Shown in pieces: positions 3,343 to 60,200 of a stretch of 64,000 nucleotides of DNA. Below the pieces are notes generated by a model. It made no database searches, was not told where the DNA came from, and saw only the letters and a list, made by a program, of their open reading frames with translations. This stretch comes from Haplodiscus bocki. Its lineage: Eukaryota. The position numbers and the translations under genes are program-made. The stretch covers positions 107,136,001 to 107,200,000 of the forward strand of contig OZ296652.1 in NCBI GenBank assembly GCA_965655095.1. The letters are read 5' to 3'. Every line of letters starts with the position of its first letter. Positions within the stretch are counted from its first letter, which is position 1.

Positions 3343-3379
3343 AAACCTATTTTAATGAAACGTAAACTTTCGTCGTTAA

Positions 3380-9627: not shown

Positions 9628-12600
9628 AAAAAGACTCAGCTCCTGTAAAATCGAGAAGTTCAAACACTGAAAACATCTGTTCGATTAAAACAACAAAGTA
9701 TCAGAAAAACAAAAAAACAAAAGTGTCTCCAAACAAGAACGTTGGATGTCAAAATACATGACAGAGGGTGACCTGATTGTGACCGATCGTCTGAAGTGGC
9801 TGAAAAGTACAGGAAACAGGAAAAACACACCAACAAGTACCAGTTGAAAGGGCTCGCACCAAAACCAGTGGGAAACTTTGAAGCGCCAATTGTATGATTG
9901 GAGCTGCAATGAATCACTACATCTGTGAAGGAAGCGATAACCATTGACCCATATCATTCGTCTAATTTATACATAAAACAGTTGAAGCAGGTCCCCTTGG
10001 TCAAGGATTTGATACTTTTGTTTGGGTACTATTTCGAAACTTGGCGTTTTTATGTTGAACTCAAAGAAACCAAGACACTAATGATGCAACTTGCTACCAC
10101 CTATTGTCTTTCATGTGGAGTAGTTCAAAGATCCGGTCGCGGCCGGAAGCTGTACTCTTCTCCACATCACCTCTCTGGAGGATCCAGTGTGTTAACACGT
10201 TTTATTGATAATCATTGAGGCACTTCTTTGTGTCAAAACAGATTTTCCGTGGTTTATACACAAAAAGTGATTTTTCAACTTTTGGTGGTTTTTGTGTCTC
10301 TGTAATCTTTGTTACTTTCAATTACACAATTCGTTTTTTCGAACTCAAATTTTTCTGAAACTAGACATTACGTTCTGCGATACGGGTGAAATCGGCAACT
10401 TTTCAACTGCGGAGGACTCATCGAGTGATGAATAACCCTTTTTTCCCTAATTTTGAATCTTGTTAGTCCCAAAGCCATAAAACGTCACGGTTTATAAAAG
10501 TTTTACGACATGTGGAATCATATTTCTCAAAAAACAGGTGGAACGTAATCTCCTAAGTTCTCAGTAAGCAGCCCTTTTTCTCAATGAGGACCATGACATT
10601 TGTGTTTTATTGATTTGTTTCTTTCTGGCTAGAATTCTGACCTTTAGAAACTGACAGAAGAAGCTCGTTGTTCTGAAAAAGACTTCACAAGCAAAATCAC
10701 ATTTGTTGAACACTAGCTGCTTAACTTCTAAAACAAAAGTCCCAATCAAAAACTTTAAGGGAGCAGTCTTTTCAAAACACAAAAATTTCTGTCTCAGCGT
10801 CTCAAAGTTGACGGAACGAAATTGCCAAAATTAGGTTTAATGAACTACAGATTTCCATTTTCAAACTTCCAAAATCCGTGTGTTTGCCAGCCTAAAAACT
10901 GCCATCAAGATTTCTGTCGTCATTTCCAGACTCCCGGATAAATATTAATGAATAAAAATCACTGATCTTAAAACCTGGTATCCACAGGAAGTTTATTAGT
11001 CCAAATGGGCCAAAAATTGATCTTACTTTGGAGTATCCCAATTTCGAAGCCAAGCTTTGCACAAAAAAGGGATTGATGTTGTCCCAAAAAGTGAAAAATG
11101 AAAATTAGCAATCACCTTGTATTGACGAAAAATGAATTTGCTGCCAACTTGTTGAAATCCAAATCCGATTTTCAGAAACTTTAGGACTTGAATTCTGCCA
11201 TCAGCGACTCAATCTAGAACTTTTTATTGAACCCAATCCTGGACGAAAAGTCATATGTGGTTTCAACCATTTTTACTCAACTCCTTCGCAAATTACCGCA
11301 AGTCGATTGGAATTATGTTCAATTCAGTCAAAGCGAATCAACCAGAACACCGTTGATTTTTGCTGTGCATCGAAGACAACAAAAATGCCATTCTTGGAAT
11401 TTTTTGACTTTGGCATGCTGAATAAATCTACATCCGGCACTGACCGTCCCTATTGCTAACTCAGAACCTTCAGGAAAATCAAGAAAACGTTCCGATCAGA
11501 AAGCGGACTTTCTTGTTTCACTCAAATTGTGCAGATTCAATCTATTACGTGTATCTTCCACGACTGTCTCTTCGTTTGGTTTGAGAAAACTCGCATTTTT
11601 CAAAAAGTCCTCATCTTGAGAGTTTCGATACCACAACGTTCTTCTATCTGGAAATTTTTGGCAGAATTAATCCCCCTAAAGACAACCATCTGTCCCTAGA
11701 CTTGAAATATTGAGAATTGGAAGAGATATGTCTCATTTTATTACCCACAAGCTGACAAGTTTTATGCAATGTATCCCTGGCTAATGGTTAGTATATATTG
11801 TTATGAGAACCAACTCTTCAGCACAGTAAATTATCCCATTGGAACGTGAGCAAGAGAGTGGATGAGTGGTGACAAAGAACAAGATTATCATGTTGCCACC
11901 AAACAAAATAGGCTGGATAAAATCAGCCAGTGAGAAAATCACCCAGTGTAATCAGGAAAAAGACTCAGTTCCTGTAAAATCGAGAAGTTCAAACACTGAA
12001 AACATCTGTTCGATTAAAACAACAAAGTATCAGAAAAACAAAAAAACAAAAGTGTCTCCAAACAAGAACGTTGGATGTCAAAATACATGACAGAGGGTGA
12101 CCTGATTGTGACCGATCGTCTGAAGTGGCTGAAAAGTACAGGAAACAGGAAAAACACACCAACAAGTACCAGTTGAAAGGGCTCGCACCAAAACCAGTGG
12201 GAAACTTTGAAGCGCCAATTGTATGATTGGAGCTGCAATGAATCACTACATCTGTGAAGGAAGCGATAACCATTGACCCATATCATTCGTCTAATTTATA
12301 CATAAAACAGTTGAAGCAGGTCCCCTTGGTCAAGGATTTGATACTTTTGTTTGGGTACTATTTCGAAACTTGGCGTTTTTATGTTGAACTCAAAGAAACC
12401 AAGACACTAATGATGCAACTTGCTACCACCTATTGTCTTTCATGTGGAGTAGTTCAAAGATCCGGTCGCGGCCGGAAGCTGTACTCTTCTCCACATCACC
12501 TCTCTGGAGGATCCAGTGTGTTAACACGTTTTATTGATAATCATTGAGGCACTTCTTTGTGTCAAAACAGATTTTCCGTGGTTTATACACAAAAAGTGAT

Positions 12601-15600
12601 TTTTCAACTTTTGGTGGTTTTTGTGTCTCTGTAATCTTTGTTACTTTCAATTACACAATTCGTTTTTTCGAACTCAAATTTTTCTGAAACTAGACATTAC
12701 GTTCTGCGATACGGGTGAAATCGGCAACTTTTCAACTGCGGAGGACTCATCGAGTGATGAATAACCCTTTTTTCCCTAATTTTGAATCTTGTTAGTCCCA
12801 AAGCCATAAAACGTCACGGTTTATAAAAGTTTTACGACATGTGGAATCATATTTCTCAAAAAACAGGTGGAACGTAATCTCCTAAGTTCTCAGTAAGCAG
12901 CCCTTTTTCTCAATGAGGACCATGACATTTGTGTTTTATTGATTTGTTTCTTTCTGGCTAGAATTCTGACCTTTAGAAACTGACAGAAGAAGCTCGTTGT
13001 TCTGAAAAAGACTTCACAAGCAAAATCACATTTGTTGAACACTAGCTGCTTAACTTCTAAAACAAAAGTCCCAATCAAAAACTTTAAGGGAGCAGTCTTT
13101 TCAAAACACAAAAATTTCTGTCTCAGCGTCTCAAAGTTGACGGAACGAAATTGCCAAAATTAGGTTTAATGAACTACAGATTTCCATTTTCAAACTTCCA
13201 AAATCCGTGTGTTTGCCAGCCTAAAAACTGCCATCAAGATTTCTGTCGTCATTTCCAGACTCCCGGATAAATATTAATGAATAAAAATCACTGATCTTAA
13301 AACCTGGTATCCACAGGAAGTTTATTAGTCCAAATGGGCCAAAAATTGATCTTACTTTGGAGTATCCCAATTTCGAAGCCAAGCTTTGCACAAAAAAGGG
13401 ATTGATGTTGTCCCAAAAAGTGAAAAATGAAAATTAGCAATCACCTTGTATTGACGAAAAATGAATTTGCTGCCAACTTGTTGAAATCCAAATCCGATTT
13501 TCAGAAACTTTAGGACTTGAATTCTGCCATCAGCGACTCAATCTAGAACTTTTTATTGAACCCAATCCTGGACGAAAAGTCATATGTGGTTTCAACCATT
13601 TTTACTCAACTCCTTCGCAAATTACCGCAAGTCGATTGGAATTATGTTCAATTCAGTCAAAGCGAATCAACCAGAACACCGTTGATTTTTGCTGTGCATC
13701 GAAGACAACAAAAATGCCATTCTTGGAATTTTTTGACTTTGGCATGCTGAATAAATCTACATCCGGCACTGACCGTCCCTATTGCTAACTCAGAACCTTC
13801 AGGAAAATCAAGAAAACGTTCCGATCAGAAAGCGGACTTTCTTGTTTCACTCAAATTGTGCAGATTCAATCTATTACGTGTATCTTCCACGACTGTCTCT
13901 TCGTTTGGTTTGAGAAAACTCGCATTTTTCAAAAAGTCCTCATCTTGAGAGTTTCGATACCACAACGTTCTTCTATCTGGAAATTTTTGGCAGAATTAAT
14001 CCCCCTAAAGACAACCATCTGTCCCTAGACTTGAAATATTGAGAATTGGAAGAGATATGTCTCATTTTATTACCCACAAGCTGACAAGTTTTATGCAATG
14101 TATCCCTGGCTAATGGTTAGTATATATTGTTATGAGAACCAACTCTTCAGCACAGTAAATTATCCCATTGGAACGTGAGCAAGAGAGTGGATGAGTGGTG
14201 ACAAAGAACAAGATTATCATGTTGCCACCAAACAAAATAGGCTGGATAAAATCAGCCAGTGAGAAAATCACCCAGTGTAATCAGGAAAAAGACTCAGTTC
14301 CTGTAAAATCGAGAAGTTCAAACACTGAAAACATCTGTTCGATTAAAACAACAAAGTATCAGAAAAACAAAAAAACAAAAGTGTCTCCAAACAAGAACGT
14401 TGGATGTCAAAATACATGACAGAGGGTGACCTGATTGTGACCGATCGTCTGAAGTGGCTGAAAAGTACAGGAAACAGGAAAAACACACCAACAAGTACCA
14501 GTTGAAAGGGCTCGCACCAAAACCAGTGGGAAACTTTGAAGCGCCAATTGTATGATTGGAGCTGCAATGAATCACTACATCTGTGAAGGAAGCGATAACC
14601 ATTGACCCATATCATTCGTCTAATTTATACATAAAACAGTTGAAGCAGGTCCCCTTGGTCAAGGATTTGATACTTTTGTTTGGGTACTATTTCGAAACTT
14701 GGCGTTTTTATGTTGAACTCAAAGAAACCAAGACACTAATGATGCAACTTGCTACCACCTATTGTCTTTCATGTGGAGTAGTTCAAAGATCCGGTCGCGG
14801 CCGGAAGCTGTACTCTTCTCCACATCACCTCTCTGGAGGATCCAGTGTGTTAACACGTTTTATTGATAATCATTGAGGCACTTCTTTGTGTCAAAACAGA
14901 TTTTCCGTGGTTTATACACAAAAAGTGATTTTTCAACTTTTGGTGGTTTTTGTGTCTCTGTAATCTTTGTTACTTTCAATTACACAATTCGTTTTTTCGA
15001 ACTCAAATTTTTCTGAAACTAGACATTACGTTCTGCGATACGGGTGAAATCGGCAACTTTTCAACTGCGGAGGACTCATCGAGTGATGAATAACCCTTTT
15101 TTCCCTAATTTTGAATCTTGTTAGTCCCAAAGCCATAAAACGTCACGGTTTATAAAAGTTTTACGACATGTGGAATCATATTTCTCAAAAAACAGGTGGA
15201 ACGTAATCTCCTAAGTTCTCAGTAAGCAGCCCTTTTTCTCAATGAGGACCATGACATTTGTGTTTTATTGATTTGTTTCTTTCTGGCTAGAATTCTGACC
15301 TTTAGAAACTGACAGAAGAAGCTCGTTGTTCTGAAAAAGACTTCACAAGCAAAATCACATTTGTTGAACACTAGCTGCTTAACTTCTAAAACAAAAGTCC
15401 CAATCAAAAACTTTAAGGGAGCAGTCTTTTCAAAACACAAAAATTTCTGTCTCAGCGTCTCAAAGTTGACGGAACGAAATTGCCAAAATTAGGTTTAATG
15501 AACTACAGATTTCCATTTTCAAACTTCCAAAATCCGTGTGTTTGCCAGCCTAAAAACTGCCATCAAGATTTCTGTCGTCATTTCCAGACTCCCGGATAAA

Positions 15601-18600
15601 TATTAATGAATAAAAATCACTGATCTTAAAACCTGGTATCCACAGGAAGTTTATTAGTCCAAATGGGCCAAAAATTGATCTTACTTTGGAGTATCCCAAT
15701 TTCGAAGCCAAGCTTTGCACAAAAAAGGGATTGATGTTGTCCCAAAAAGTGAAAAATGAAAATTAGCAATCACCTTGTATTGACGAAAAATGAATTTGCT
15801 GCCAACTTGTTGAAATCCAAATCCGATTTTCAGAAACTTTAGGACTTGAATTCTGCCATCAGCGACTCAATCTAGAACTTTTTATTGAACCCAATCCTGG
15901 ACGAAAAGTCATATGTGGTTTCAACCATTTTTACTCAACTCCTTCGCAAATTACCGCAAGTCGATTGGAATTATGTTCAATTCAGTCAAAGCGAATCAAC
16001 CAGAACACCGTTGATTTTTGCTGTGCATCGAAGACAACAAAAATGCCATTCTTGGAATTTTTTGACTTTGGCATGCTGAATAAATCTACATCCGGCACTG
16101 ACCGTCCCTATTGCTAACTCAGAACCTTCAGGAAAATCAAGAAAACGTTCCGATCAGAAAGCGGACTTTCTTGTTTCACTCAAATTGTGCAGATTCAATC
16201 TATTACGTGTATCTTCCACGACTGTCTCTTCGTTTGGTTTGAGAAAACTCGCATTTTTCAAAAAGTCCTCATCTTGAGAGTTTCGATACCACAACGTTCT
16301 TCTATCTGGAAATTTTTGGCAGAATTAATCCCCCTAAAGACAACCATCTGTCCCTAGACTTGAAATATTGAGAATTGGAAGAGATATGTCTCATTTTATT
16401 ACCCACAAGCTGACAAGTTTTATGCAATGTATCCCTGGCTAATGGTTAGTATATATTGTTATGAGAACCAACTCTTCAGCACAGTAAATTATCCCATTGG
16501 AACGTGAGCAAGAGAGTGGATGAGTGGTGACAAAGAACAAGATTATCATGTTGCCACCAAACAAAATAGGCTGGATAAAATCAGCCAGTGAGAAAATCAC
16601 CCAGTGTAATCAGGAAAAAGACTCAGTTCCTGTAAAATCGAGAAGTTCAAACACTGAAAACATCTGTTCGATTAAAACAACAAAGTATCAGAAAAACAAA
16701 AAAACAAAAGTGTCTCCAAACAAGAACGTTGGATGTCAAAATACATGACAGAGGGTGACCTGATTGTGACCGATCGTCTGAAGTGGCTGAAAAGTACAGG
16801 AAACAGGAAAAACACACCAACAAGTACCAGTTGAAAGGGCTCGCACCAAAACCAGTGGGAAACTTTGAAGCGCCAATTGTATGATTGGAGCTGCAATGAA
16901 TCACTACATCTGTGAAGGAAGCGATAACCATTGACCCATATCATTCGTCTAATTTATACATAAAACAGTTGAAGCAGGTCCCCTTGGTCAAGGATTTGAT
17001 ACTTTTGTTTGGGTACTATTTCGAAACTTGGCGTTTTTATGTTGAACTCAAAGAAACCAAGACACTAATGATGCAACTTGCTACCACCTATTGTCTTTCA
17101 TGTGGAGTAGTTCAAAGATCCGGTCGCGGCCGGAAGCTGTACTCTTCTCCACATCACCTCTCTGGAGGATCCAGTGTGTTAACACGTTTTATTGATAATC
17201 ATTGAGGCACTTCTTTGTGTCAAAACAGATTTTCCGTGGTTTATACACAAAAAGTGATTTTTCAACTTTTGGTGGTTTTTGTGTCTCTGTAATCTTTGTT
17301 ACTTTCAATTACACAATTCGTTTTTTCGAACTCAAATTTTTCTGAAACTAGACATTACGTTCTGCGATACGGGTGAAATCGGCAACTTTTCAACTGCGGA
17401 GGACTCATCGAGTGATGAATAACCCTTTTTTCCCTAATTTTGAATCTTGTTAGTCCCAAAGCCATAAAACGTCACGGTTTATAAAAGTTTTACGACATGT
17501 GGAATCATATTTCTCAAAAAACAGGTGGAACGTAATCTCCTAAGTTCTCAGTAAGCAGCCCTTTTTCTCAATGAGGACCATGACATTTGTGTTTTATTGA
17601 TTTGTTTCTTTCTGGCTAGAATTCTGACCTTTAGAAACTGACAGAAGAAGCTCGTTGTTCTGAAAAAGACTTCACAAGCAAAATCACATTTGTTGAACAC
17701 TAGCTGCTTAACTTCTAAAACAAAAGTCCCAATCAAAAACTTTAAGGGAGCAGTCTTTTCAAAACACAAAAATTTCTGTCTCAGCGTCTCAAAGTTGACG
17801 GAACGAAATTGCCAAAATTAGGTTTAATGAACTACAGATTTCCATTTTCAAACTTCCAAAATCCGTGTGTTTGCCAGCCTAAAAACTGCCATCAAGATTT
17901 CTGTCGTCATTTCCAGACTCCCGGATAAATATTAATGAATAAAAATCACTGATCTTAAAACCTGGTATCCACAGGAAGTTTATTAGTCCAAATGGGCCAA
18001 AAATTGATCTTACTTTGGAGTATCCCAATTTCGAAGCCAAGCTTTGCACAAAAAAGGGATTGATGTTGTCCCAAAAAGTGAAAAATGAAAATTAGCAATC
18101 ACCTTGTATTGACGAAAAATGAATTTGCTGCCAACTTGTTGAAATCCAAATCCGATTTTCAGAAACTTTAGGACTTGAATTCTGCCATCAGCGACTCAAT
18201 CTAGAACTTTTTATTGAACCCAATCCTGGACGAAAAGTCATATGTGGTTTCAACCATTTTTACTCAACTCCTTCGCAAATTACCGCAAGTCGATTGGAAT
18301 TATGTTCAATTCAGTCAAAGCGAATCAACCAGAACACCGTTGATTTTTGCTGTGCATCGAAGACAACAAAAATGCCATTCTTGGAATTTTTTGACTTTGG
18401 CATGCTGAATAAATCTACATCCGGCACTGACCGTCCCTATTGCTAACTCAGAACCTTCAGGAAAATCAAGAAAACGTTCCGATCAGAAAGCGGACTTTCT
18501 TGTTTCACTCAAATTGTGCAGATTCAATCTATTACGTGTATCTTCCACGACTGTCTCTTCGTTTGGTTTGAGAAAACTCGCATTTTTCAAAAAGTCCTCA

Positions 18601-20532
18601 TCTTGAGAGTTTCGATACCACAACGTTCTTCTATCTGGAAATTTTTGGCAGAATTAATCCCCCTAAAGACAACCATCTGTCCCTAGACTTGAAATATTGA
18701 GAATTGGAAGAGATATGTCTCATTTTATTACCCACAAGCTGACAAGTTTTATGCAATGTATCCCTGGCTAATGGTTAGTATATATTGTTATGAGAACCAA
18801 CTCTTCAGCACAGTAAATTATCCCATTGGAACGTGAGCAAGAGAGTGGATGAGTGGTGACAAAGAACAAGATTATCATGTTGCCACCAAACAAAATAGGC
18901 TGGATAAAATCAGCCAGTGAGAAAATCACCCAGTGTAATCAGGAAAAAGACTCAGTTCCTGTAAAATCGAGAAGTTCAAACACTGAAAACATCTGTTCGA
19001 TTAAAACAACAAAGTATCAGAAAAACAAAAAAACAAAAGTGTCTCCAAACAAGAACGTTGGATGTCAAAATACATGACAGAGGGTGACCTGATTGTGACC
19101 GATCGTCTGAAGTGGCTGAAAAGTACAGGAAACAGGAAAAACACACCAACAAGTACCAGTTGAAAGGGCTCGCACCAAAACCAGTGGGAAACTTTGAAGC
19201 GCCAATTGTATGATTGGAGCTGCAATGAATCACTACATCTGTGAAGGAAGCGATAACCATTGACCCATATCATTCGTCTAATTTATACATAAAACAGTTG
19301 AAGCAGGTCCCCTTGGTCAAGGATTTGATACTTTTGTTTGGGTACTATTTCGAAACTTGGCGTTTTTATGTTGAACTCAAAGAAACCAAGACACTAATGA
19401 TGCAACTTGCTACCACCTATTGTCTTTCATGTGGAGTAGTTCAAAGATCCGGTCGCGGCCGGAAGCTGTACTCTTCTCCACATCACCTCTCTGGAGGATC
19501 CAGTGTGTTAACACGTTTTATTGATAATCATTGAGGCACTTCTTTGTGTCAAAACAGATTTTCCGTGGTTTATACACAAAAAGTGATTTTTCAACTTTTG
19601 GTGGTTTTTGTGTCTCTGTAATCTTTGTTACTTTCAATTACACAATTCGTTTTTTCGAACTCAAATTTTTCTGAAACTAGACATTACGTTCTGCGATACG
19701 GGTGAAATCGGCAACTTTTCAACTGCGGAGGACTCATCGAGTGATGAATAACCCTTTTTTCCCTAATTTTGAATCTTGTTAGTCCCAAAGCCATAAAACG
19801 TCACGGTTTATAAAAGTTTTACGACATGTGGAATCATATTTCTCAAAAAACAGGTGGAACGTAATCTCCTAAGTTCTCAGTAAGCAGCCCTTTTTCTCAA
19901 TGAGGACCATGACATTTGTGTTTTATTGATTTGTTTCTTTCTGGCTAGAATTCTGACCTTTAGAAACTGACAGAAGAAGCTCGTTGTTCTGAAAAAGACT
20001 TCACAAGCAAAATCACATTTGTTGAACACTAGCTGCTTAACTTCTAAAACAAAAGTCCCAATCAAAAACTTTAAGGGAGCAGTCTTTTCAAAACACAAAA
20101 ATTTCTGTCTCAGCGTCTCAAAGTTGACGGAACGAAATTGCCAAAATTAGGTTTAATGAACTACAGATTTCCATTTTCAAACTTCCAAAATCCGTGTGTT
20201 TGCCAGCCTAAAAACTGCCATCAAGATTTCTGTCGTCATTTCCAGACTCCCGGATAAATATTAATGAATAAAAATCACTGATCTTAAAACCTGGTATCCA
20301 CAGGAAGTTTATTAGTCCAAATGGGCCAAAAATTGATCTTACTTTGGAGTATCCCAATTTCGAAGCCAAGCTTTGCACAAAAAAGGGATTGATGTTGTCC
20401 CAAAAAGTGAAAAATGAAAATTAGCAATCACCTTGTATTGACGAAAAATGAATTTGCTGCCAACTTGTTGAAATCCAAATCCGATTTTCAGAAACTTTAG
20501 GACTTGAATTCTGCCATCAGCGACTCAATCTA
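9628..20532. repeat. Essentially perfect tandem repeat, 2329 bp x ~4.7
   Basis: Identical ORFs recur at a 2329 bp offset (9925, 12254, 14583, 16912, 19241). The only difference I saw is C at 9640 versus T at 11969. The first mismatch of copy 5 is at 20533. Confidence 0.97.
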
Positions 20533-23500: not shown

Positions 23501-23648
23501 ACTCTCAAAACCAACAGTTGGCACTATTACAACATGAATAAATGTTGATCAGTGGCGGAAAAGATCAAAATTTGCATCTCGCGACCAAACAAGGTTGGTG
23601 GCATAAATTACTACAGTGGGGAGACTCTGCTGTGTTTTTAGGAAAAAG

Positions 23649-38632: not shown

Positions 38633-38926
38633 TCAAATAGTAAGACACTCAGTCTCTAAAACTTCGTCTAGCTGGACAGTCTTCGTGATAATTGATCCAT
38701 GAAGAACATCTGCATTTAGTAATGAATTCCTCAGAAACGAAAGCGTTATATCTAAATAATGAAAAACCGCCGGTTTGAGAACGTTATTCAAAATCTCATT
38801 GACTAATCGATAGGATGCGTATTTAACAAGCAAAGTCTTGAAACTAAAATATGGTCCGACTATCACATCAACAAAAATTTGGTCAGTGACTGCAAAGATC
38901 AAAAAAAGCATTTCGAAGCCAAACAA
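38633..38926 (-). pseudogene. Array unit ORF family A (representative), unknown function
   Basis: The same frame stays partly open in diverged units: FGxDMLxLxFAxxxQxFVxVxxGQ...LLVxxxYYxLVxE...ITLPFLRSSxLKxDVxHGSIITKTVQ (27850..28095, 30224..30529, 34040..34294, 38633..38926, 40798..41040, continued in 54474..54815). Confidence 0.5.
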
Positions 38927-49300: not shown

Positions 49301-51252
49301 TAAAGATCTGGTTTTGTAAATTCAAAATGACCAGAAACTGCACACTTAACATTCTGCATCAAGCGTGCAGCCGACAGCTTCTCAACTGCAGGGCACTTCC
49401 CAAGTGAAGAATAACCAGTTTTCTTCTTTTAGTTTGAATGGTGGTAGTTCAAAAACTACCCAACGTCCTCTTTTTTCAAACTTTCTTGACATTTAAAAAT
49501 AGATTTCGAGAAAAAACAGCCTGGATATTTTTAAAGGTCGTTTGAACGTGCTCTCTGGCTTTAAAGTGTCCAAGATATTCAAAAAATGTTGATTGGTTCT
49601 TTCTATTTCTTGTCTTGACGTTCAGAAACCGACGGAAAACGAGGGTTTTTTGGAAAAACTGCAACTGAAAAAAGTTATATCATCAGCACTATGTGTCTCA
49701 TTCCTCCTATAGAGGTCACAACCAACATCTTCAATTATCAGGGTAACTTTCGTAAAGTCGTCATCCGTGTTGTCTGCCTCTGAGTCCTGATAGACCGAAA
49801 TAGCTAAACTTGTAAAAATTTTTCACCGAATTCGTTATTCAAACCGCAAAATCCTCGAATGTAGGATTTTGAAAAAGCTCCCACGAGCCCTCACCGTCAG
49901 TTCTATATTTGACACTGGCCATTGGGGAGAAAGAACGAGGGTTTTGATCTTTAGTGTCGGAAGTAACCTTGACAGTCCAGAAAACACAAAAAGTGATAAT
50001 CCTTTTTTATCCCGGTTTTGAACTCCGTGTTCCTAGAATAACACGGCTTACTTTCACCCACGAGCTAGAAAGTGATATTGACTAACTGCAAAATTTGTCC
50101 GATGGAAACTCCGTGATTTTTAGAAGAGCAACAGTTCTTAATGTAAACCCGACGAAGATGATTGACGCAAGTGCCTAAGTTAGATTGTCGCTATTGGAAA
50201 AGACTATTTTCTAAAGTTTTCGGTTTGATTTTTGACGCCAAAGAGTTACCCTACAACTTTTCATTCAGTCAAAGTCTTGCTTAATAATCATTTGTATCAT
50301 CGATTATTTCTACAGATCTTCAACTGAAGTTATCGCAGTTTGTCTGCAATTATTAACAGATTCAGAAAACTCGACTCAAACATAGAGCCAATGAATATTG
50401 TTGAGCAACAGAGACCGCAACACGCCATTTTGCGAAGATCATGTGTTCGGCACGCTCTTGACCTTTACAGATGGGACGGTGTGTCTCTTTTGCTAACTGA
50501 AGAAGATTTGGAGTTATCACAAAACCATTCCCATAAAGCTTCAATTTGTCTATGTAGACTTTCTGGTTTTGCGCCTTACGTGTTTTTTCAATCGATTATG
50601 TGTGCCTTCAAGAACTGTCCATTACCTTGATTTCAAAAAAGTCCCAACAGACAGCTGATCCAAAAGGTGAGACAACCAAACTCCGAAACTTAGTCTAGCT
50701 GAACAGCCTTCATGTTACTTGACCCATAGAACATCTGTCTTTAGTGTTAAACTCCTCAGAAATGGAAGCGTTCAATGTAAGTTTTGAATAGCCACCAACT
50801 TGACAACGATATCAAAAAAAAACAAAAGCTAATCGCTAGTCTGCATTGCTAACAAGCAAAGTCTTGGAACCAAAAACTTGTCCGACTACCACCTCATCAA
50901 AAATTTGGTCAGTGACTGCAAAGATCAAAATAAGCATGTCACGGGCCAAACATGAATGGCTTGGTAGCTTACCATAGCGAGACAACTACGCTATAAATGA
51001 CAAAGAGTAATCACTATTGCAAAATCAGTATCTCTAAGCATCTAATTTATCTATTCACTGAAACAATAAAGTACCAGAAAAACAGACGTGGATCCAAACA
51101 AGCACGTTGGATGTCAGATCACGTGACATTGCGTGTGCCGAATGTAGAAGACGGTTCGAAGGAAGAAGAAGTGAAAGAAATTGGGAAATGTGTACACCTT
51201 TGAAAACAAAATCTGTTACAATGCAATTGTGAAAAACCGGTCGAAAGGGCGA
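46340..51252. repeat. Near-perfect tandem duplication, period 2442 bp
   Basis: ORFs are duplicated at +2442 (47034/49476, 47898/50340, 48555/50997). Confidence 0.95.
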
Positions 51253-54200
51253 ATATCTCAAATATCAAAACAATTAAAGCACCAAAAGATTGGAGCTGCA
51301 AAAGACACTGTGGTAAATAGCGAGTCGGAAAAGCAAGGAAACTCATCAAAAGTCTAATATGGAGAAAATTTAGTTCAAGCAGTTCCCGTTCGCAGCAATT
51401 TGAAACTTCTGTTCCTATACTGGTCCAAAATTTAGCCCTCAACAGGTTAGGATCACACAATGCTGCACGCTAAAGGTTCAGTTCACACTCACCATTTGAC
51501 ATTGACATGGAGCAATTTGAAGTTGAGTTGTACCTGGAGTCAAAAAGTGTACACATTGTTTAGACCAGCATTCATGAAGTTACAGCTCGATAATACCGAT
51601 TTGATCGTCTGCTAAGCACTCATTAGGAGATGTCTATGCATCAAGTCTGTCTATCCGAGATTTTCATTAAAAAAACTTATTAATTAAAAATCTGGTTTTG
51701 TAAACTCAAAAAAAACAAATTATCACTCTTAAAATTCTGCATCAAGGGTGCAACCGACATCTTCTCATTTGCGGAGCACTTTCCAAGAAAAGGATATACA
51801 ATTTCCTTCCTTTAGTCTGAATGCTGATAGTTCAAAAACTATCCAAGGTCCTCTTCTTCCAAACTTTCTTGACATTTAAAAATAGATTTCGAGAAAAAAC
51901 AGCCTGGATATTTTTAAAGGTCGTTTTAACGTGCTCTCTGGCTTTAAAGTGTCCAAGATATTCAAAAAATGTTGATTGGTTCTTTCTATTTCTTGTCTTG
52001 ACGTTCAGAAACCGACGGAAAACGAGGGTTTTTTGGAAAAACTGCAACTGAAAAAAGTTATATCATCAGCACTATGTGTCTCATTCCTCCTATAGAGGTC
52101 ACAACCAACATCTTCAATTATCAGGGTAACTTTCGTAAAGTCGTCATCCGTGTTGTCTGCCTCTGAGTCCTGATAGACCGAAATAGCTAAACTTGTAAAT
52201 ATTTTTTACCGAATTCGTTTTTGAAACCGCAAAAATCCTTAGTTTCGCGGACTTCTTAGTTTTGCGCTTTTTGTGTACATTCAATCAGCTTCGGGTATCT
52301 TTAAAAACAGAATATTCAATTGTTTTTTAAAAAGCTAGAGTTCACAGCGTTTCCTAACACTCAGATTTTCAATCTCCAAACCTTTTCGTAACTGGAAAGC
52401 CATGGTGATAGTTATCCAACTAAAGACAAACAAATATATTTAGTTTTGATTTCATCAGAGTCTAAAGAGGTAAATTTCAATTTATTAAGCATTGGGGATT
52501 AGCAGCGTTACCCAATATGTCAAAGAATAACGGAAATTTTGCATTGTTAGCAAACAGATACTTCAAATCAATGCAAGGCACTGTTACAACCTGAGCAAAT
52601 TTTGGTCAGTGACTGCAAAGATCAAAACAGGCATGTCGAGGCCAAACAAGGTTTGCGGGGTAGCTTTTCACAGTGAGACAACTACGCTGTATAAATGACA
52701 AAGAGTCATCACTCTTGCAAAATCAGTATCTCTGAACATCTAATATATTTATTCACTGAAACAATAAAGTACCAGCAAAACATACGTAGATCCAAACAAG
52801 CACGTTGGATGTCAAAGCACATGACTTTGCGTAGGCCAAATGTGGAAGATGATTCGAAGGAAAAAGAAGTGGAAGGAAATGGAAAGTAAGTACGCCATCG
52901 AAATCCAAAGTTTTTTTCAATCTTTTCAGCAAAAATTGGTCAAAACAACCTGTGTCACAACTATCGAAAGGCCTTGAAGCACCAAGGGATTAGTTGGAGC
53001 TACAGTGGCCACTCTCGCAATTAGGCATTCGAAAAAGCACTGAAGCAATTCTGCAGTCTCATATGAAGGAAGACCGGTAGAAGCAGGTCCCGTTTGGCAG
53101 CTTTTGAAACTTTTCTTTCAAATTTTTGGTATGGTTTTGTCTGAAACATGGCCTTTTACATATCGGGCTCACACACACTTGTACACTAAAGAATCAGGTC
53201 GCTAGCACAACTTGACCTTGAGATGGTGCACATTGATGATGAGGTGGGTTCAAGAAGGTTTACTCATTGCTTGGATCAGTTGTCAGGAAGATACAATGCG
53301 ATATTACACCGTTATCACAAGGTATTCTGCTCAAAAGTTGATATACAATGTCTATACGTCAAGTCAACATTTTCAGAGTTCCAAACAGAAATTATTGTTT
53401 TATGTGTCTCTGGCGCCTACGCTACTATTATTTGCAGATATCGGTTTTCAAACTCAAATTACTTATGATTTAAGAACTCAATGTTGTGCATCGAGGTTGA
53501 AATCCAGAGTCCTTCGTGTGCAGAGGACTTCTCAAGTGGAAACTATTGAATTCTGGTCCTCCAGTTTAAATGTTGGTAATGTAAAAAACAACTGAGCTCA
53601 GGAATTATGTAAAATTGCTCGAAACTAGTGTCCGTTTTTTTTTCAGAAAAACTGGCCAGACGTCTCACATTAAGGTGTCATTAAGCAGCTTTTTCTCTTG
53701 TGGATGATCATGTTTTTTGGACTTTAGTCATTTGTTTTTCTTTCATGAGTACTGATAACTAAAACTTTCCTAACTAACCTTCGGTGGTTCCACCTTACAT
53801 TTTAACATTGAAACGGTTTTTTTTAAAAAAAAACATCCTTTGTTTTTTCTTCGTCTGTTCGTCTGAGTCCCCGCAGACCAAAAATGCCAACCTTGAGACT
53901 AATTAATTAATACGTCGGTTTTAAAAATCCTAAAGTCGATGATACTAACAGCATGAAAATTGCCATCAAGAGCTCCGTCGTCAGTTCTTTACTTCCGTAT
54001 GACTATTCAGTGAAATACTTACAAGTCTGAGTTCTTGATGTCAAAAGGAGATTTCATAGTCGAAAAAAGCCAAAAGAGATCCTATTTCCAATTTATCCCG
54101 GTTTTGAAATACTTGTTCCTTCAAAAATTGGCGAATTTGTCAGAGAAGCTAATATTTGACAACAATCAATCTGTAGATTTGTTGTTGGAAGGAAACTCCT

Positions 54201-57200
54201 TGACTTCTGCAAAAGCAACTTTTCTTCATGAAAGGCTGAAATTGACGAAAGGTTCAACTACTAATATAATTTATTCGATATTCAACATCATGGTTTTCTG
54301 AAGCCCTCGACTTGAATTCTGCCATCTTGGACTTAACCAACAAATTTTTATTTTGTCAAATTCTTGGTGAGAAACTGTCCGTTTTCTCGTCAATTTTCAC
54401 ACAAAATTTACAGAATATATTGCATCTAGACAGCCAGAATTCCTAAGTCAGACAAATCACATCAGTCAGAGAGTCAAACGTCTGCTGCACAACGGAGACA
54501 GCAAGTACCGGCGTGGAGATAACCTTGGTGTAGACACTTCCATAACATAAAACCGAAAAACTCTCTTGCTGTCTCAAGAACTTGTGGAGTAACCATCAAG
54601 CTGTTCCAAAAACTTTGAGTTCGTCTGTATAGATTTCTTAGTTTTGAGTTTTTCGTGTATATTCCAGCAGCTTTGTGTATCTTCAGGAACCGTTTTTTCA
54701 ATTGTTTCAGAAAAAATTCCACTTCACAGCGTTTTGTAACATTTAGAGTTTCAATCACCAAATCTCTTCCTAACTGGACAAGGTTGGTGTTAGTTATCCC
54801 CTTAGAGATTACCAAATGTATTTAGTATTCAACTTTCCAGAGTCGAAAGAAGTAAGTCTCAATTTAATAGCCATTGGGGATTAGAAGCGTTAACCAAAAT
54901 GTCAAAGAGTAACGGTTTTTTTACACTGTTAACAAACAGATGCTTCAAACCAATGAAAGGCACTATTACAATCTGAACGGATTTTAGTCAGTAGAGGCCA
55001 AAGTCAGGACTAGCATGTTGCGGCAAAAAAACGTGGGTGGCGTAGTTTACCACTGTGAGACATCTACGCTGTATGAAGGAGAAAAAGTCATCACTATTGC
55101 AGAATCTGTAACTTTAAACATCGAAGTTCTCAATTCACTGAAACAGCAAGTACCAGAAAAACAGAAGCAGATGCAAACAAGCACGTTGGATGTCAAGTCA
55201 CATGACTTTGCGCGGGCCATATGTGGAAGGTGATTCGAAAGAACAGGGAGTGAAAGTACCTGGAAAGTAAGTACGCCATTGGAACCCAAAGTCTCTTTTC
55301 ATTATATTCATCAAAAATTGGCTAAACGAGCCTGTATCACAACTATCGAAAGACTTTGAATTACCAACGGTTTAGTTGGAGCAATGATGGCCTCTCTCGC
55401 AATTAAGCATCCGAAACAGTACTGAAACCATTCAACAGTCGTGTGTGAAGAAAAACCCGTAGAAGCACGTCCCGTTTGGCAGTAATTTGAAACAATGCTT
55501 TCAAAATTTTGATTCCGGATTAGTCGGAAAAAGGCGTTATACATGTTGAGCTCACGTACACTTCTAAACTAAAGGTTCAGGTCGCTAACACAACTTGACC
55601 TTGATATGGAGCACTTTGAAGATGAGGTGGGATTAGGAATGTTTACTCATTGCGTGGATCGGTTTCCAGGAAGATAAAGTGCGAAATTACGTCCTATTCA
55701 CAAAATCTTCAGTCAAAATTCGTTATACAATGTCTAAGGGTCAAGTCAACATCTCCATCTCTTTTCCTAAAAAAATTCTTCCATTTGTCTTTGGCGCCTA
55801 CTCTTCAATCAAGTGCAGGTTTCAATTTTTCAACTCAGAATAAGCAACTATGATCGAAATGTTCTCCATCAAGTGTACAACCGGCAGCTCCTCATATGCA
55901 AAGGACATTTCAAGAACAAACTAACCAACTCTGTTACTTCATTTTGAATTTTGGTAGTGCAAAAACTAACCAAAGTTTTGTTTTGTTCGATTTTCCTCAA
56001 CATTATTATTTCTCAAAAAAACGGTTTCAGTAAGCAACTTTCGTGCTTATGGAGGACCACTACATTCGAACTGTCTTGATTGGTTTCTTTCTTTTCAGTG
56101 TACTGATACATAAAAGCTACCAGACTGTGCTGGTACTCTGTAATTAACTCCACTTGCAAAAACTTCTTCCCTCAACACTACCTACTTCAACCCTTTTTTG
56201 CAGGTCCCACCTAACATCTTAACACTGAGGCGGATTTTTACTAAAACGTCCTTTTTTTTGATGCGTCTGAGTCCTGGCACACCGAAAATGCCAACCTTGA
56301 GCTTCATGAGTTCATACGTCGGTTTCCAAAACTCGAAATTCAGTGATTTTATCAGCTCGAAAAGTGCCATCAAGAATTCCGTCGTCAGTTCTACACTTCC
56401 AGATGACTATTCAGTGAAAAACTTACGAGTCATTTTTCTTGGTGTCCAAAAGGGATTTGATAGACAGTCCAAAAGTTAAAGACATTTTTTTCGATTCATG
56501 CCGGTTATGAAATACATGTTCCTCCAAAAAATAGCTGGAATTCGTCACACAAGTTAATATTTGACAACAATCAATCTATAGATGCGTTGTTGGATGGAAA
56601 CTCCGTGACTTCTGCAAAGGCAACTTCTCGCAAATAAAGGCCGGAGTGTTGACGAAATGTGCAGCTGCTGTTGATATTTCTTCGATATTCAACATCATTG
56701 TTTTCTGAAGCCCTCGATTTGATCTCTGTCATCTTACACTTAAGCGACACAATTTTATTGAGTCAATTTCTTGATGACAGAGCGTGCGTTGTCTCATTCA
56801 TTTTTATCCACAATTGACAGAACATATTGGAGCTAGACTGCCAGAATTCCTAAGTCAGACAAATCGAGTCAGTCAAAGAGGCAGACTTCTGCTGTACAAC
56901 GGAGAGCGCAAGTACCAATGTGGAGATAACTTTGGCTTTGACACTTCCATTACATAAGTTGGAGAGACTCTCTTGCTGTCTCAGGAACTTGTGGAGTAAC
57001 TTTCGAACTGTTCCAAAAACTTTGAATTCGTCTAAACGAACTTATTGGTTTTGCGTTTTTCATGTTTTATCAATCAGCTATATTTATCTTCAAGGACCCA
57101 ATATTCAATTGTTTCTCCATTGGAAAGACATAGTTCCATTGGACAGTTTTTCCTACCCTTCAGACTTTCATTCTCCAAATCTTCTTCTAAGTGGATAACC

Positions 57201-60200
57201 TTCGTGACAATTATCACCTTAAAGACTATCAATTTGTTTTACTGTTGGATTTTTGAGTTGAAAAATTTACTTCTCAATTCGATAACCACCAGATTACCAG
57301 CGCCATCCTGTATCCCACTGACTAACGGATATCATGGCCTGTTACCAAACAAACACTTGAACCTAAGAGGTGGGACTTTCTCATGGTGAACAAAAGTTGC
57401 TCAGGGGCGGCAGAGATCGAAATTAGCATGTCGCGGCCAAAAAAGCTAGGTGGGGTAAATTACAACAGTGAGTCAACTGGATCATTAGCAGAAGTTCATA
57501 GGTATGGTGAAGTCAGTATCAAAACTTATTGAAAGTAACTTTTTAACTGAATTATAAAACTACCAGAAGACATGTAGATCAACACAAGCACGTTGGATGG
57601 CAAATCACATGATTCTGCGTCAATCGAAGAAAAACCAAAATTCAAAGGAGAAAAAAAGTTTAAGGAAGTGGAGAGTACGCAATGAAAACCAAAATTTCTG
57701 TCAAAAAATCAGACTGCGGTGGAAGGAGCTAGTGTCGCAAGTATCGCAAAACCTTGAAACACCAAGTGTTTGAAGGGAGCTACGTTTGATCACATTTGCA
57801 CTTAAGGGTTTGAAAGCCGCTGAAACCTAGCAAAAGTCCCATAGGAAGAAAAATCAGTAAAGGCAGGTAATGTTGGGCAGTTATTTGATACTTTTGTTCA
57901 TAAAGTAGTATGAAAATTGGCTTTAGAAACGTTTCCACTCAAACCTGAACGCTAATGATCCGGATCACTACCACCACTTAAGATGAGATGGAATATATCA
58001 AAAATTAGATCGGGGTGTGAAGCTTTTTTCATTGTTCAGATCAATTTTCAACAAAAAACAGTGCGGTGATACGTTTTATTGATAAGATTTCCCTCTAGTT
58101 GTTGATTGAGGTATGTTTTCATCTCCATTCTTTTCTTTCGAAATTGGTGATTTTTCAAGCTCAAATCTGTTCTGTCTCTGGCGTTTACGTTACTAATACT
58201 TACAGATCTCGGTTTTGCAACTCAAAGTGTTCAATGACTATGAACTCAAGGTTCTGCGTAAAGGTTGCAATCGACAGCGCTTTATCTGTGGAGGACATTC
58301 CGAGCCGAGGAACCCTCTTTTGTTCCCTTTGTTTGAATCCTGATAGTGTAAAACGAACTGGAGGTCGTTTTATCTCCAAACCCTTGATAATATTGTTCGT
58401 ATTTCCCAATAAAAACAAGCAACACGTCTTCCTTTAAGGTCTCACTAGGCAGCTTTGATGTTTGTAGAGGACCATGGCCCTTAAAAAATTTTGATTAGTT
58501 TTTTTTCTATTGGGAGTCCAGGTGCTTGGAAACTGCCGGACAATTTTGGCAGTTTTGGAAAAGCTCTACCTGCAAAAACAGATTTCTTCAGCACTTGCTT
58601 CTTCAGTCCTTCTACAGAAGTCCTAATCAAAATTCTTTAACTGGAAGGTTTTTTTCGAAAAAAACCGTTTATTTTTTTCCGGCGTCCGTCCTGGCACACT
58701 GGAAATGCTGAATTTGTGAAAAAAACTGCAGACGTCCGTTTTAGGACGTCTAAGTTCCGTGTAATTACATGCATTAAATTTGCCATCAAATGCTCTGTCG
58801 TCAGTTCAACACTTGAGGATGATTCATAAGCACAAAATTGACGGGCCTTCTTCCTTCGTGTCGATGGAATCTTGAGTCTACAAAAAAAGCAAAAACTAAA
58901 CCCACTTTTAATATATAAAGTTTGTGAAATCAATGATTCTCTAAGAGGAGGACTCATTTTTGTCCCAAAGTTAAACCTAACATTTATCCAGCCTTAGAAC
59001 TGTTTTCCGATAGAAACTCTTTGATTTTTTTAAAGGCAACTGTTTTTTATGAAAAGCCAAAAATGATGAAATCTGCAAGTACTCACGTACTTTTGTTGAT
59101 TTTCAGATTGATCATTTTCTGGAGCTCTCGACTTCAGTTTTTCAGTTCAGCCATCAATGACCTATTCTACTACTTTTTTTTCAGTCAAGGTTTTGGTGAA
59201 GAATTATTTGTTGTATCAACCACTTCTGCTTTTGACTCAATTTATCGTGGTACGATTGCGAAATTTCGTTTTTCAGACAAATCGCGGCAACTTGGGAGAC
59301 GCTGACTTTTGCTGTGCAACGGAGAGAGTCAGTACACATTTTGCGACAATCCTGGGTTAAGGACGCTCAAATTTTCCCTACAAGAAGCGAGGTACCTCTT
59401 ACGCTGAATCAAGTGTTTGTGGAGTATTCAAGAGACAGTTCTAAAAAATGTCTTTTAGTTTTTAGTCTATGTGGCTGTTAATGTCTTGCTCTCTACGTCT
59501 GTTTGCAACAGAATACATAGTTCTAAAAGGACATTTTTTTCCAATTCATTCAAAAATCGTCCACTCAATAGCTCTTCGTAACATTGAGATTTTCAATCTT
59601 CAAATCGTCCTCGAACTGGAAAGTCTTGGTGGTAGTTGTCCCATTAAAAACATCTGTCTTCAAAGTTGAAATCCTCAAAAAAGGAAGCGTTTCTTCTAAA
59701 TTTCTAAAGCACCGGCCCACCAGTGTTAACCATTTTCTCACTGACTAATTGATAGTATGCATTGTAATCAAACAAACTGTTGAATGCATCAAAGTGCACT
59801 ATACCAAAGCGAACAGAAGGTTATTAGTAGTGGCAACGATAAGAATTACCACGTCGCGGCCACACAAAGTGGGTGAGTTTGAATACTTCAATGAAACATC
59901 CACGCAAGGTGGTCAAGAAACTTTGAAAAATAAGAGAAAATATATACGCATAAACATCGAAGGTATCTATTCAACTGAACAAACAAATTGTAGAGAAAAG
60001 CTGAAGGTCCAAACAAGCACGTTGGATGTGAAAGCACAAAATTTTGCGTGGGTGAAGTGCGAAGAAAGGCTTGGAGGGGACAAAAAGTATAGGAAACGTG
60101 AAAGAAGGTACACCATCAAATGCCGTTCGCATGAGCGGGCAACACAACTATTGAGAAACTTTGAAGCACCAAGTGTAAGCATGGAGCTACAATGGATCAC

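What the first reader, a model, noticed from the sequence alone, without database searches (positions are those of the whole stretch)
9727..60031. Conserved ~25-bp palindromic site once per unit (ATCCAA-N9-TTGGAT-GTCA)
Seen: 23 copies. The core CAAGCACGTTGGATG is unchanged in most subfamilies (23736, 48650, 52790, 55171, 57578, 60007) while flanks vary much more. The arms ATCCAA/TTGGAT are inverted repeats around an asymmetric 9-nt spacer. Established: inverted arms plus an asymmetric core is the architecture of recombinase attachment sites, dimeric protein operators and replication-origin hairpins. Inference: a cis-acting site maintained after the ORFs died. Caveats: it also lies in a possible reading frame (CFDIQRACLD), the arms are short, and some copies (25927, 28237 family) are degenerate.
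Basis: partly seen in the sequence, partly recalled or inferred. Interest (0 to 1): 0.72.

Follow-up and report, generated by a model that had tools for sequence, protein, structure and literature searches.

The report
Conserved 24-base box in macrosatellite
A 53-kb array of non-coding 2.3-2.4-kb repeats has drifted almost to randomness, yet nearly every unit keeps one 24-base box, which points to a recognition site for an unknown factor rather than the hairpin or recombination site first proposed.

Summary
There are 23 in-register copies, one per unit, in a head-to-tail array at 9628-62367. ACGTTGGATG is exact in 18 copies, against 2.8 expected by chance. This box is the only strongly significant conserved island in the unit. 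It shows 0.6-0.75 parsimony changes per column against a unit mean of 2.52. In most units the core differs from the majority at 0-4% of positions, against 22-40% for the rest of the same unit.

The conserved element is one contiguous block of about 24-32 nt (TCCAAACAAGCACGTTGGATGTCA plus a few flanking bases). Arm changes are not compensated, and the hairpin is no better than shuffled sequence. An 8-bp duplication changes the arm spacing and is tolerated. Mosaic and crossover points do not fall at the site, and units with a decayed or missing box were still duplicated.

The units show no sign of ever having coded for protein: no codon periodicity, no usable genetic code and no Pfam signal. No known RNA family or consensus RNA fold was found.

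The best reading is a sequence-specific recognition box, most likely for a DNA-binding protein, kept by purifying selection in a macrosatellite. DXZ4/CTCF and CENP-B-box satellites are functional analogues, but neither consensus is met. The factor and the role are unknown, and no relatives were reachable outside the window.

The parts
9628..62367 (+). Head-to-tail array of about 24 unit equivalents (2.3-2.45 kb each, 37-39% GC). It starts at the N gap (9428-9627) and ends at 62367. It is non-coding.
   Evidence: Unit-profile nhmmer map, self-blastn, composition profile, coding tests.
9728..9751 (+). Box copy 1 (TCCAAACAAGAACGTTGGATGTCA, 1 difference from the majority). It is the first of four 100%-identical units.
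12057..12080 (+). Box copy 2 (1 difference).
14386..14409 (+). Box copy 3 (1 difference).
16715..16738 (+). Box copy 4 (1 difference).
19044..19067 (+). Box copy 5 (1 difference).
21362..21385 (+). Box copy 6 (1 difference). The unit is only 66% identical to copies 1-5.
23737..23760 (+). Box copy 7, identical to the majority 24-mer.
25928..25951 (+). Box copy 8, decayed (6 of 24 differences, the same rate as the rest of that unit).
28238..28261 (+). Box copy 9, partly decayed (3 of 24 differences).
30672..30695 (+). Box copy 10, partly decayed. Its unit is 100% identical to the previous one.
33106..33129 (+). Box copy 11, partly decayed. Its unit is truncated by a junction from unit position 196 to 1300 at 33239.
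34439..34470 (+). Box copy 12, with an 8-bp tandem duplication (AGCACGTT twice). The arm spacing is 17 nt instead of 9.
36757..36788 (+). Box copy 13, with the same 8-bp duplication.
39069..39100 (+). Box copy 14, with the same 8-bp duplication. The left arm reads TTCCAA.
41108..43252 (+). Unit lacking the box. An unequal-crossover junction (unit position 2286 to 278) removed positions 1-277. The same junction recurs at 43819/43820.
43321..43344 (+). Box copy 15 (1 difference).
45995..46018 (+). Box copy 16 (2 differences), in a 212-bp stub duplication of the unit's 5' part.
46209..46232 (+). Box copy 17 (1 difference: GGAAG, so the ATG is lost).
48651..48674 (+). Box copy 18, identical to the majority.
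51093..51116 (+). Box copy 19, identical to the majority.
52791..52814 (+). Box copy 20, identical to the majority.
55172..55195 (+). Box copy 21 (1 difference, in the left arm and uncompensated).
57579..57602 (+). Box copy 22 (3 differences). The left arm is disrupted, but AGCACGTTGGATG is intact.
60008..60031 (+). Box copy 23 (1 difference), in the most diverged unit (40% from the majority elsewhere).
53140..53303 (+). Representative copy (unit 52723) of a second, weaker zone of reduced substitution. It lies at unit columns 377-540, 300-460 bp downstream of the box.
   Evidence: The 50-column window scores 89.5 against a mean of 142.4, permutation p<0.001. Alignment. No consensus RNA fold.
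55003..55030 (+). Representative copy of a shorter internal relative of the box (GCATGTCGCGG-CCAAACAAG-GTTGG), about 190 bp upstream of the next box. It is only moderately conserved.

Best explanation
The window holds an old non-coding macrosatellite of 2.3-2.4-kb units in head-to-tail order. The array has been reshaped by unequal crossing-over, and some blocks were amplified recently.

The units drift nearly neutrally. Each unit nevertheless carries one contiguous box of about 24 nt, TCCAAACAAGCACGTTGGATGTCA, loosely extending to about 32 nt. Purifying selection acting on the nucleotide sequence keeps this box.

The most likely mechanism is that the box is the recognition site of a sequence-specific DNA-binding factor with a long footprint. 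Candidates are a multi-zinc-finger or architectural protein, or a promoter-proximal factor. Such a site would give the array one bound position every 2.4 kb. The role would then be architectural or insulator-like, chromosome-landmark-like, or the start of a unit-length non-coding transcript.

Shown here: the array, its non-coding nature, the sharp-edged constraint, the lineage-specific loss of constraint, and the lack of hairpin or covariation support.
For: - The box is the only strongly significant conserved island in the unit.
- Its edges are sharp, within 2-3 nt. That fits a discrete site better than gene-conversion tracts.
- The core differs at 0-4% of positions against 22-40% for the rest of the same unit, across lineages separated by an ML tree length of 3.77 substitutions per site.
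- Constraint is lost in one clade, so the box is not a mutational cold spot.
- All copies share one orientation and one position in the unit.
- There is no coding signal.
- There is no RNA family or consensus fold.
- Continuous invariance over about 24 nt, including an invariant CpG in CpG-depleted DNA (observed/expected 0.77), fits a long protein footprint.
- There is a documented precedent. [quoted passage not shown] In Meloidogyne, divergent satellites share a conserved 19-bp box (PMC8097292).
Against: - No binding protein, transcript or chromatin data exist here.
- The host organism is unknown, and no related sequence could be found outside the window. Conservation is therefore measured only among paralogous units of one array.
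- A 24-nt block with no degenerate positions is longer and more uniform than most transcription-factor sites. Its length equally fits a small RNA or a small-RNA target.
- The box matches neither the CTCF core nor the CENP-B box.
- A weaker constrained zone 300-460 bp downstream and an ATG plus a donor-like GTAAGT hint that a transcript may be involved.
Confidence: 0.45

Rival explanations
1. The box is the transcription start, 5' leader or core-promoter element of a unit-length non-coding (or formerly coding) transcript. Each unit would be a transcription unit, and the box would be read as part of the promoter or the first exon.
For: - The box contains an ATG that is kept in 19 of 23 copies.
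- About 78 nt downstream, one clade keeps a donor-like AAG|GTAAGT or GTGAGT.
- The box lies in a purine-rich segment of about 600 bp.
- A second, weaker constrained zone lies 300-460 bp downstream.
- DXZ4 conservation also includes a promoter.
Against: - The donor-like site is confined to related units and is mutated in two of them.
- The peptide after the ATG is not conserved and shows no third-position pattern.
- No conserved TATA-like or other upstream element was found.
- No consistently open frame covers the box.
- This reading overlaps with the best explanation, because a promoter factor site is a protein-binding site.
Confidence: 0.2
2. The block is read at the RNA level. It would be the sequence of a processed small RNA of about 22-30 nt, or the target or binding site for a small RNA or an RNA-binding protein in an array transcript.
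For: - The block length (24-26 nt tightly) and its sharp edges equal small-RNA sizes.
- On the minus strand it begins with T/U.
- Conservation is uniform along the block, with no degenerate positions.
Against: - There is no hairpin precursor or consensus structure on either strand.
- No Rfam match was found, even at E<=5.
- No conserved upstream small-RNA promoter motif was seen.
- No expression data are available.
Confidence: 0.12
3. The box would be a palindromic attachment or recombination site, a dimeric operator, or a rolling-circle origin hairpin, possibly from a tandemly integrated small circular replicon. The site would drive or have driven the array's amplification.
For: - The majority sequence has 6-bp inverted arms 9 nt apart.
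- The unit size of 2.3-2.4 kb resembles small rolling-circle replicons.
- Several junction endpoints (unit positions 196, 215, 278, 435) lie 100-350 bp downstream of the box.
Against: - The spacer is more conserved than the arms.
- Pairing is no better than shuffles, with one compensatory cell against ten broken ones.
- The hairpin energy has z = -0.25, and the hairpin is lost in units that keep the core.
- Comparable inverted repeats occur by chance in 3-5% of windows.
- The 8-bp duplication changes the spacing and is tolerated.
- Switch points are scattered and none falls at the site.
- Units with a decayed or missing box were still duplicated.
- There is no Rep, recombinase or any other Pfam signal.
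- There is no in-phase nonanucleotide.
- There is no similarity to plasmid or phage records.
Confidence: 0.05
4. The box has no function of its own. It stays similar through local homogenisation (short-tract gene conversion), a local mutational cold spot, or chance.
For: All copies are paralogues in one array, where concerted evolution is evident (100%-identical neighbouring units, mosaic units).
Against: - Conversion tracts seen here are hundreds of bp long with scattered ends, whereas the island is 24-32 nt with sharp edges in all subfamilies.
- A cold spot is excluded by the clade in which the core decays at the background rate.
- Chance is excluded by permutation (0 of 2000) and by the alignment-free k-mer result.
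Confidence: 0.06
5. The box is a remnant of a protein-coding exon that is still under selection at the amino-acid level (for example the minus-strand frame ...FDIQRACLD..., or the plus-strand frames).
For: Minus-strand stop-free spans over the box have a median of 65 codons, against a null of 31.
Against: - The long minus-strand spans follow from the purine-rich + strand.
- No frame is open in all units.
- There is no 3-periodicity of substitutions, and only 17 of 148 indels are multiples of 3.
- Translated comparisons show no strand preference.
- No alternative genetic code opens the units.
- Pfam finds only chance-level hits, and the protein word search finds nothing.
- The invariant run includes all three codon positions.
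Confidence: 0.02

Closest known systems
DXZ4 / ICCE-type mammalian macrosatellites with a conserved CTCF site (PMC3491370, PMC3218863, PMC6125249)
   Same: Both are kilobase-scale tandem units (3 kb there, 2.3-2.4 kb here) that are not obviously coding and diverge fast. In both, conservation is restricted to a short protein-recognition motif (plus a promoter) present once per unit in a fixed orientation.
   Different: The box does not match the CTCF core consensus (0 matches in the window at <=1 mismatch). This array is AT-rich (38% GC), not GC-rich. The host is an unknown, AT-rich, non-mammal-looking genome. Conservation here is measured among paralogous units, not between species.
CENP-B box in alpha-satellite and other centromeric satellites (from established knowledge)
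   Same: Both are a short protein-binding box kept within otherwise variable satellite monomers. By coincidence they share the heptamer CGTTGGA.
   Different: The essential positions TTCG-N4-A-N2-CGGG are not met. Only 3 out-of-phase matches were found in the window, fewer than the chance expectation of 4.7. The monomer here is 2.3-2.4 kb, not 171 bp.
Conserved 19-bp box of CenH3-associated tandem repeats in Meloidogyne (PMC8097292)
   Same: In both, one short box is conserved among otherwise very divergent tandem-repeat families in an AT-rich genome. A small dyad symmetry is noted within the box in both cases.
   Different: That box is about 80% GC and sits in 45-84-bp monomers. This one is 46% GC and sits in 2.3-2.4-kb units. 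No centromere data exist here.
Recombinase attachment sites and rolling-circle origin hairpins
   Same: Both have short inverted arms around a 9-nt centre, present once per unit-length element.
   Different: There is no covariation, no stable hairpin, no nonanucleotide, no recombinase or Rep remnant, and no crossover focus at the site. The centre is more conserved than the arms.

Membership tests
Macrosatellite (tandem array of kilobase-scale units) | Head-to-tail array of units of at least 1 kb, with many copies. | tested here: met
   About 24 unit equivalents of 2.3-2.45 kb, all in + orientation, at 9628-62367.
Macrosatellite with a conserved protein-binding box (DXZ4-like) | Conservation is restricted to a short motif while the rest of the unit diverges. 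| tested here: met
   There is one weaker secondary zone.
Macrosatellite with a conserved protein-binding box (DXZ4-like) | The motif is a CTCF core site (CCASYAGRKGGCR). | tested here: not met
   0 matches in the window at <=1 mismatch.
Macrosatellite with a conserved protein-binding box (DXZ4-like) | Demonstrated occupancy by the protein (ChIP or footprint). | not testable with these tools
   No chromatin or binding data are available, and the host is unknown.
CENP-B-box satellite | Essential positions TTCG-N4-A-N2-CGGG, present in phase with the monomer. | tested here: not met
   3 matches at <=1 mismatch, none at the box, against a chance expectation of 4.7.
Recombinase attachment site / dimeric operator | Inverted half-sites are the constrained part, and the central spacer is free or less constrained. 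| tested here: not met
   Spacer 0.6 changes per column against 1.0-1.5 in the arms. An 8-bp insertion in the spacer is tolerated.
Recombinase attachment site / dimeric operator | Exchange points (mosaic boundaries, deletion junctions) fall at the site. | tested here: not met
   Switch points lie at unit columns of roughly 150, 300, 750, 850, 1350 and 1600. Junctions lie at 196, 215, 278, 435, 937, 1251, 2005, 2083 and 2286. None lies at columns 67-100.
Rolling-circle origin (CRESS virus, Helitron or RC plasmid) | A stable stem-loop carrying a conserved nick motif such as NANTATTAC in the loop. | tested here: not met
   The hairpin is -3.1 kcal/mol with z = -0.25. The nonanucleotide is not in phase with the units.
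Rolling-circle origin (CRESS virus, Helitron or RC plasmid) | A Rep or helicase coding remnant in the unit. | tested here: not met
   Pfam on the 50 longest stop-free pieces gave only chance-level singletons. There is no plasmid or phage DNA similarity.
Structured non-coding RNA / miRNA-like hairpin | A conserved secondary structure with covariation, or a match to a known family. | tested here: not met
   Rfam at gathering threshold and at E<=5 found nothing at the box. The alifold consensus is -1.67 kcal/mol, with 0.0 kcal/mol for the wider zones. There is no tRNA.
Protein-coding exon | Codon periodicity of substitutions, indels in multiples of three, and one open frame shared by the copies. 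| tested here: not met
Small-RNA locus (piRNA- or siRNA-type) or small-RNA target | Small RNAs with defined ends that map to the block. | not testable with these tools
   No expression data are available. Only the block length (24-26 nt) is compatible.

The most novel reading that the evidence does not exclude
The array is an ancient, functionally maintained macrosatellite in an AT-rich non-mammalian eukaryote. Its only selected part is a 24-nt recognition box for a still unknown architectural factor, such as a chromosome-pairing, centromere-like or insulator protein, or a small-RNA pathway. That would be a new box/reader pair, independent of CTCF and CENP-B. The periodic array of boxes would be the functional entity, not any gene.
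Probability: 0.25. Interest if true: 0.65.

Novelty: new member of a known kind. Interest (0 to 1): 0.42.

Why it matters
Large tandem repeats are usually dismissed as junk and are poorly assembled. This array is old enough for its units to be about 40-50% diverged, yet one 24-nt box per unit is kept. That is direct sequence evidence that something reads the array.

It gives a concrete, short, testable probe. The intact box can be compared with its naturally decayed version in unit 25859 to fish for the binding protein or small RNA, and to ask what macrosatellites do outside mammals.

The palindrome is incidental, so the search should not be aimed at recombinases or replication initiators.

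Tried and rejected
1. Coding origin, rejected.
- Translated comparisons between units showed no strand preference (+3766 against -3639 bits).
- Seven stop-codon schemes, including ciliate-type codes, opened no frame beyond chance.
- There is no substitution periodicity and no excess of indels in multiples of three.
- Pfam on the 50 longest pieces gave chance-level hits only.
- The word-based protein search with the 160-aa ORF spanning the box found nothing.

2. Known RNAs, rejected. Rfam found nothing at gathering threshold or at E<=5, and there are no tRNAs. No consensus fold was found.

3. tRNA-like A/B-box (Pol III) reading of the core plus a GGTTCGAAGG 39 nt downstream, rejected. The B-box-like word is not conserved, and ARAGORN finds nothing.

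4. TATA-like element about 130 bp upstream, rejected. It is present in only a few units.

5. External relatives, none found.
- A 22-mer scan of metagenome and prokaryote-genome collections returned nothing.
- Looser 17-18-mer scans returned only chance word matches with no unit similarity.
- Exact-ORF look-ups returned nothing.
- Plasmid and phage blastn returned nothing.

6. Literature search by sequence was uninformative. ACGTTGGATG equals the MassARRAY primer tag, so all hits are genotyping papers.

7. Host identification from the flanks failed. There are no intact genes and no Pfam hits. TTTTCAG is modestly enriched, but the count is inflated by duplicated units.

8. The costly all-against-all protein search and the structure tools were not used, because there is no protein to search. 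The N gap at 9428-9627 was left untouched. Nothing in the window looked human.

Full report
**1. What is there**

The window has an AT-rich left flank (1-9427, 28% GC, no intact genes), a 200-N gap (9428-9627), and then 37-39% GC DNA up to the end of the window. That GC-richer DNA is a head-to-tail array from 9628 to 62367, followed by 1.6 kb of unrelated sequence.

Self-comparison and a unit profile show about 24 unit equivalents of 2.3-2.45 kb in one orientation. Tandem Repeats Finder misses the array because its period limit is 500.

The array is strongly graded.
- Four units are 100% identical, next to the gap.
- One unit is 95% identical to those, and one is 66% identical.
- The remaining subfamilies are only 50-60% identical in global alignment.

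Several units are rearranged by unequal crossing-over.
- A junction from unit position 2286 to 278 occurs at 41108 and again at 43819/43820, and removes the box from one unit.
- A junction from 196 to 1300 occurs at 33239.
- A junction from 1251 to 1951 occurs at 52241.
- A 212-bp stub duplication lies at 45927-46138.

**2.

- CAAGCACGTTGGATG with at most 2 mismatches occurs 19 times, against 0.06 expected.
- ACGTTGGATG is exact in 18 copies, against 2.8 expected.
- The four degenerate copies were recovered with a profile.

In an alignment of ten subfamily representatives, the box is the best window at every size. A 25-column window scores 234/250, against a permutation maximum of 201.5 +/- 3.2. 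In that majority-count test, no other 25-column window in the 2.4-kb unit is significant.

The units were cut relative to the box, which could favour alignment quality there, so I repeated the test without an alignment. All of the exact 10- and 12-mers shared by the most subfamilies come from this site.

On a tree of 15 distinct units (ML length 3.77 substitutions per site), columns average 2.52 parsimony changes, against 0.6-0.75 in the core.

**3. It is selection, not a cold spot**

In most units the 24-mer TCCAAACAAGCACGTTGGATGTCA differs from the majority at 0-4% of positions, while the rest of the same unit differs at 22-40%. In one clade the constraint has lapsed. For unit 25859 the figures are 25% against 25%. 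For units 28169/30603 they are 12% against 24%.

The edges of the island are sharp, within 2-3 nt. The conversion and crossover tracts visible in the array are hundreds of bases long with scattered ends.

**4. The units are non-coding**

- The longest ORF is 160-182 codons.
- No alternative stop-codon scheme opens the units beyond chance.
- Translated comparisons between diverged units favour neither strand.
- Substitutions show no 3-periodicity, and only 17 of 148 short indels are multiples of three.
- The 50 longest stop-free pieces give only chance-level Pfam singletons.
- An ORF spanning the box has no relatives in the word-indexed protein database.
- Stop-free spans over the box are long only on the minus strand. 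That follows from the purine-rich + strand in this part of the unit.

**5. The palindrome is incidental**

- The arms exist in the majority sequence, but the supposed spacer is the most conserved part (0.6 changes per column, against 1.0-1.5 for the arms).
- Left-arm variants (CTCCAA, TTCCAA, GTCCAA, ATGCAA, ATCAAC, ATCCCA) are not matched by right-arm changes.
- Formally, 88.9% of cells pair, against 88.4% after shuffling (199 of 500 shuffles as high). There is one compensatory cell, in a decayed copy, against ten broken ones.
- The RNAalifold consensus energy is -1.67 kcal/mol.
- As single-stranded DNA the hairpin is -3.1 kcal/mol at best (z = -0.25). It disappears in units 55105 and 57513, which keep the core.
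- A 6-bp inverted repeat with a 3-14-nt loop occurs in 3-5% of same-sized windows of the array.
- The 34372/36690/39002 family carries an 8-bp tandem duplication (AGCACGTT) that widens the arm spacing from 9 to 17 nt.

**6. No link to recombination or replication**

- Nearest-neighbour tracing along the unit shows many mosaic boundaries, at about columns 150, 300, 750, 850, 1350 and 1600. None falls at the box (columns 67-100).
- Four junction endpoints lie 100-350 bp downstream of the box. This is a mild crowding that I did not test.
- Units with a decayed box (28169 and 30603, 100% identical to each other) and the box-less unit were still duplicated. Amplification therefore does not need the box.
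- There is no Rep or recombinase remnant.
- There is no in-phase nonanucleotide.
- There is no similarity to plasmids or phages.

**7. Other context in the unit**

- A second, weaker constrained zone lies 300-460 bp downstream (unit columns 377-540, permutation p<0.001). It has no periodicity and no consensus fold.
- A shorter relative of the box (CCAAACAAG-GTTGG) lies about 190 bp upstream and is only moderately conserved.
- The core contains an ATG. One clade keeps a donor-like GTAAGT or GTGAGT about 78 nt downstream. The intervening 'peptide' is not conserved.
- No conserved TATA-like element was found.
- No Rfam family matches the box, even at E<=5.

**8. Explanation**

I take as well supported (about 0.85) that the box is a cis-element under nucleotide-level purifying selection.

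Which reader recognises it is an inference.
- A sequence-specific DNA-binding protein with a long footprint is the most likely (0.45). This includes the case where that protein is a promoter factor.
- A promoter or 5' leader reading in the narrow sense comes next (0.2).
- A small-RNA-level reading follows (0.12).
- Homogenisation or chance (0.06) and coding (0.02) are also unlikely.

**9. Comparison with known systems**

Functionally the closest are macrosatellites and satellites that keep only a protein box.
- CENP-B-box satellites (established knowledge).
- The Meloidogyne 19-bp box (PMC8097292).

Membership in these families fails on the defining consensus.
- There is no CTCF core.
- The CENP-B essential positions are absent.
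- The Meloidogyne box is about 80% GC in 45-84-bp monomers.

So the site works like these systems but is not a member of any of them. I rate it a new member of the general kind 'conserved recognition box in a diverging tandem repeat'.

**10. Limits**

No related sequence could be reached outside the window. The host is unidentified. All conservation is among paralogues of one array.

The four identical units next to the N gap may partly reflect assembly. The gap was not filled or looked up. Nothing in the window looked human, and no step needed referral.

Noticed in passing
window 9628-18966: Four 100%-identical 2329-bp units directly abut the 200-N gap (9428-9627). This is either a very recent amplification or an assembly effect. 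The true copy number across the gap is unknown.
   Followed up: partly
window 34439-34470, 36757-36788, 39069-39100: An 8-bp tandem duplication (AGCACGTT AGCACGTT) sits inside the box in one subfamily. Both overlapping halves of the box stay intact, and the arm spacing becomes 17 nt.
   Followed up: yes
window 45927-46138: A 212-bp stub duplication of the 5' part of the unit gives two boxes 214 bp apart (45995 and 46209).
   Followed up: partly
window 41108-43252 and 43820-45926: The same unequal-crossover junction (unit position about 2286 to 278) occurs twice. A rearranged block lacking the box region was therefore itself duplicated.
   Followed up: partly
unit columns 377-540, e.g. window 53140-53303, 55524-55686, 10033-10194: A second, weaker zone of reduced substitution lies 300-460 bp downstream of the box (permutation p<0.001). 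It has no codon periodicity and no consensus RNA fold.
   Followed up: partly
e.g. window 55003-55030, 57416-57443, 11878-11905: An internal relative of the box (GCATGTCGCGG-CCAAACAAG-GTTGG) lies about 190 bp upstream of each box. In two subfamilies it reads CCAAACAAGTTTGG, a perfect 6+6 palindrome. It is only moderately conserved.
   Followed up: partly
about 78 nt downstream of the ATG in the box, e.g. window 52880-52895, 55260-55275, 34535-34550: A splice-donor-like AAG|GTAAGTAC or GTGAGT is kept in one clade of units and mutated in units 43253 and 48583. It could mark a short first exon of a unit transcript, or it could simply be shared ancestry.
   Followed up: partly
unit columns about 2200-2425 and 0-400 (the 600 bp around each box): This segment is purine-rich on the + strand (AT skew +0.2 to +0.3, GC skew up to +0.16). 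The rest of the unit is balanced.
   Followed up: no
core ACGTTGGATG (all copies): The invariant 10-mer happens to be identical to the 5' tag used on MassARRAY genotyping primers. Literature searches by sequence therefore return only genotyping papers. I treat this as a coincidence, because the surrounding units are natural, diverged genomic repeats.
   Followed up: yes
window 1-9427 and 62368-64000: GC content jumps from 28% to 38% at the left edge of the array. Both flanks lack intact genes and Pfam hits. Two similar minus-strand fragments at about 2460-2680 and 3540-3650 (…IDELHL… / …IDKIHLKSGCAAGRVVNG…) may be remnants of a repeated element. TTTTCAG is modestly enriched (57 against 37 expected), but the count is inflated by duplicated units.
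   Followed up: partly
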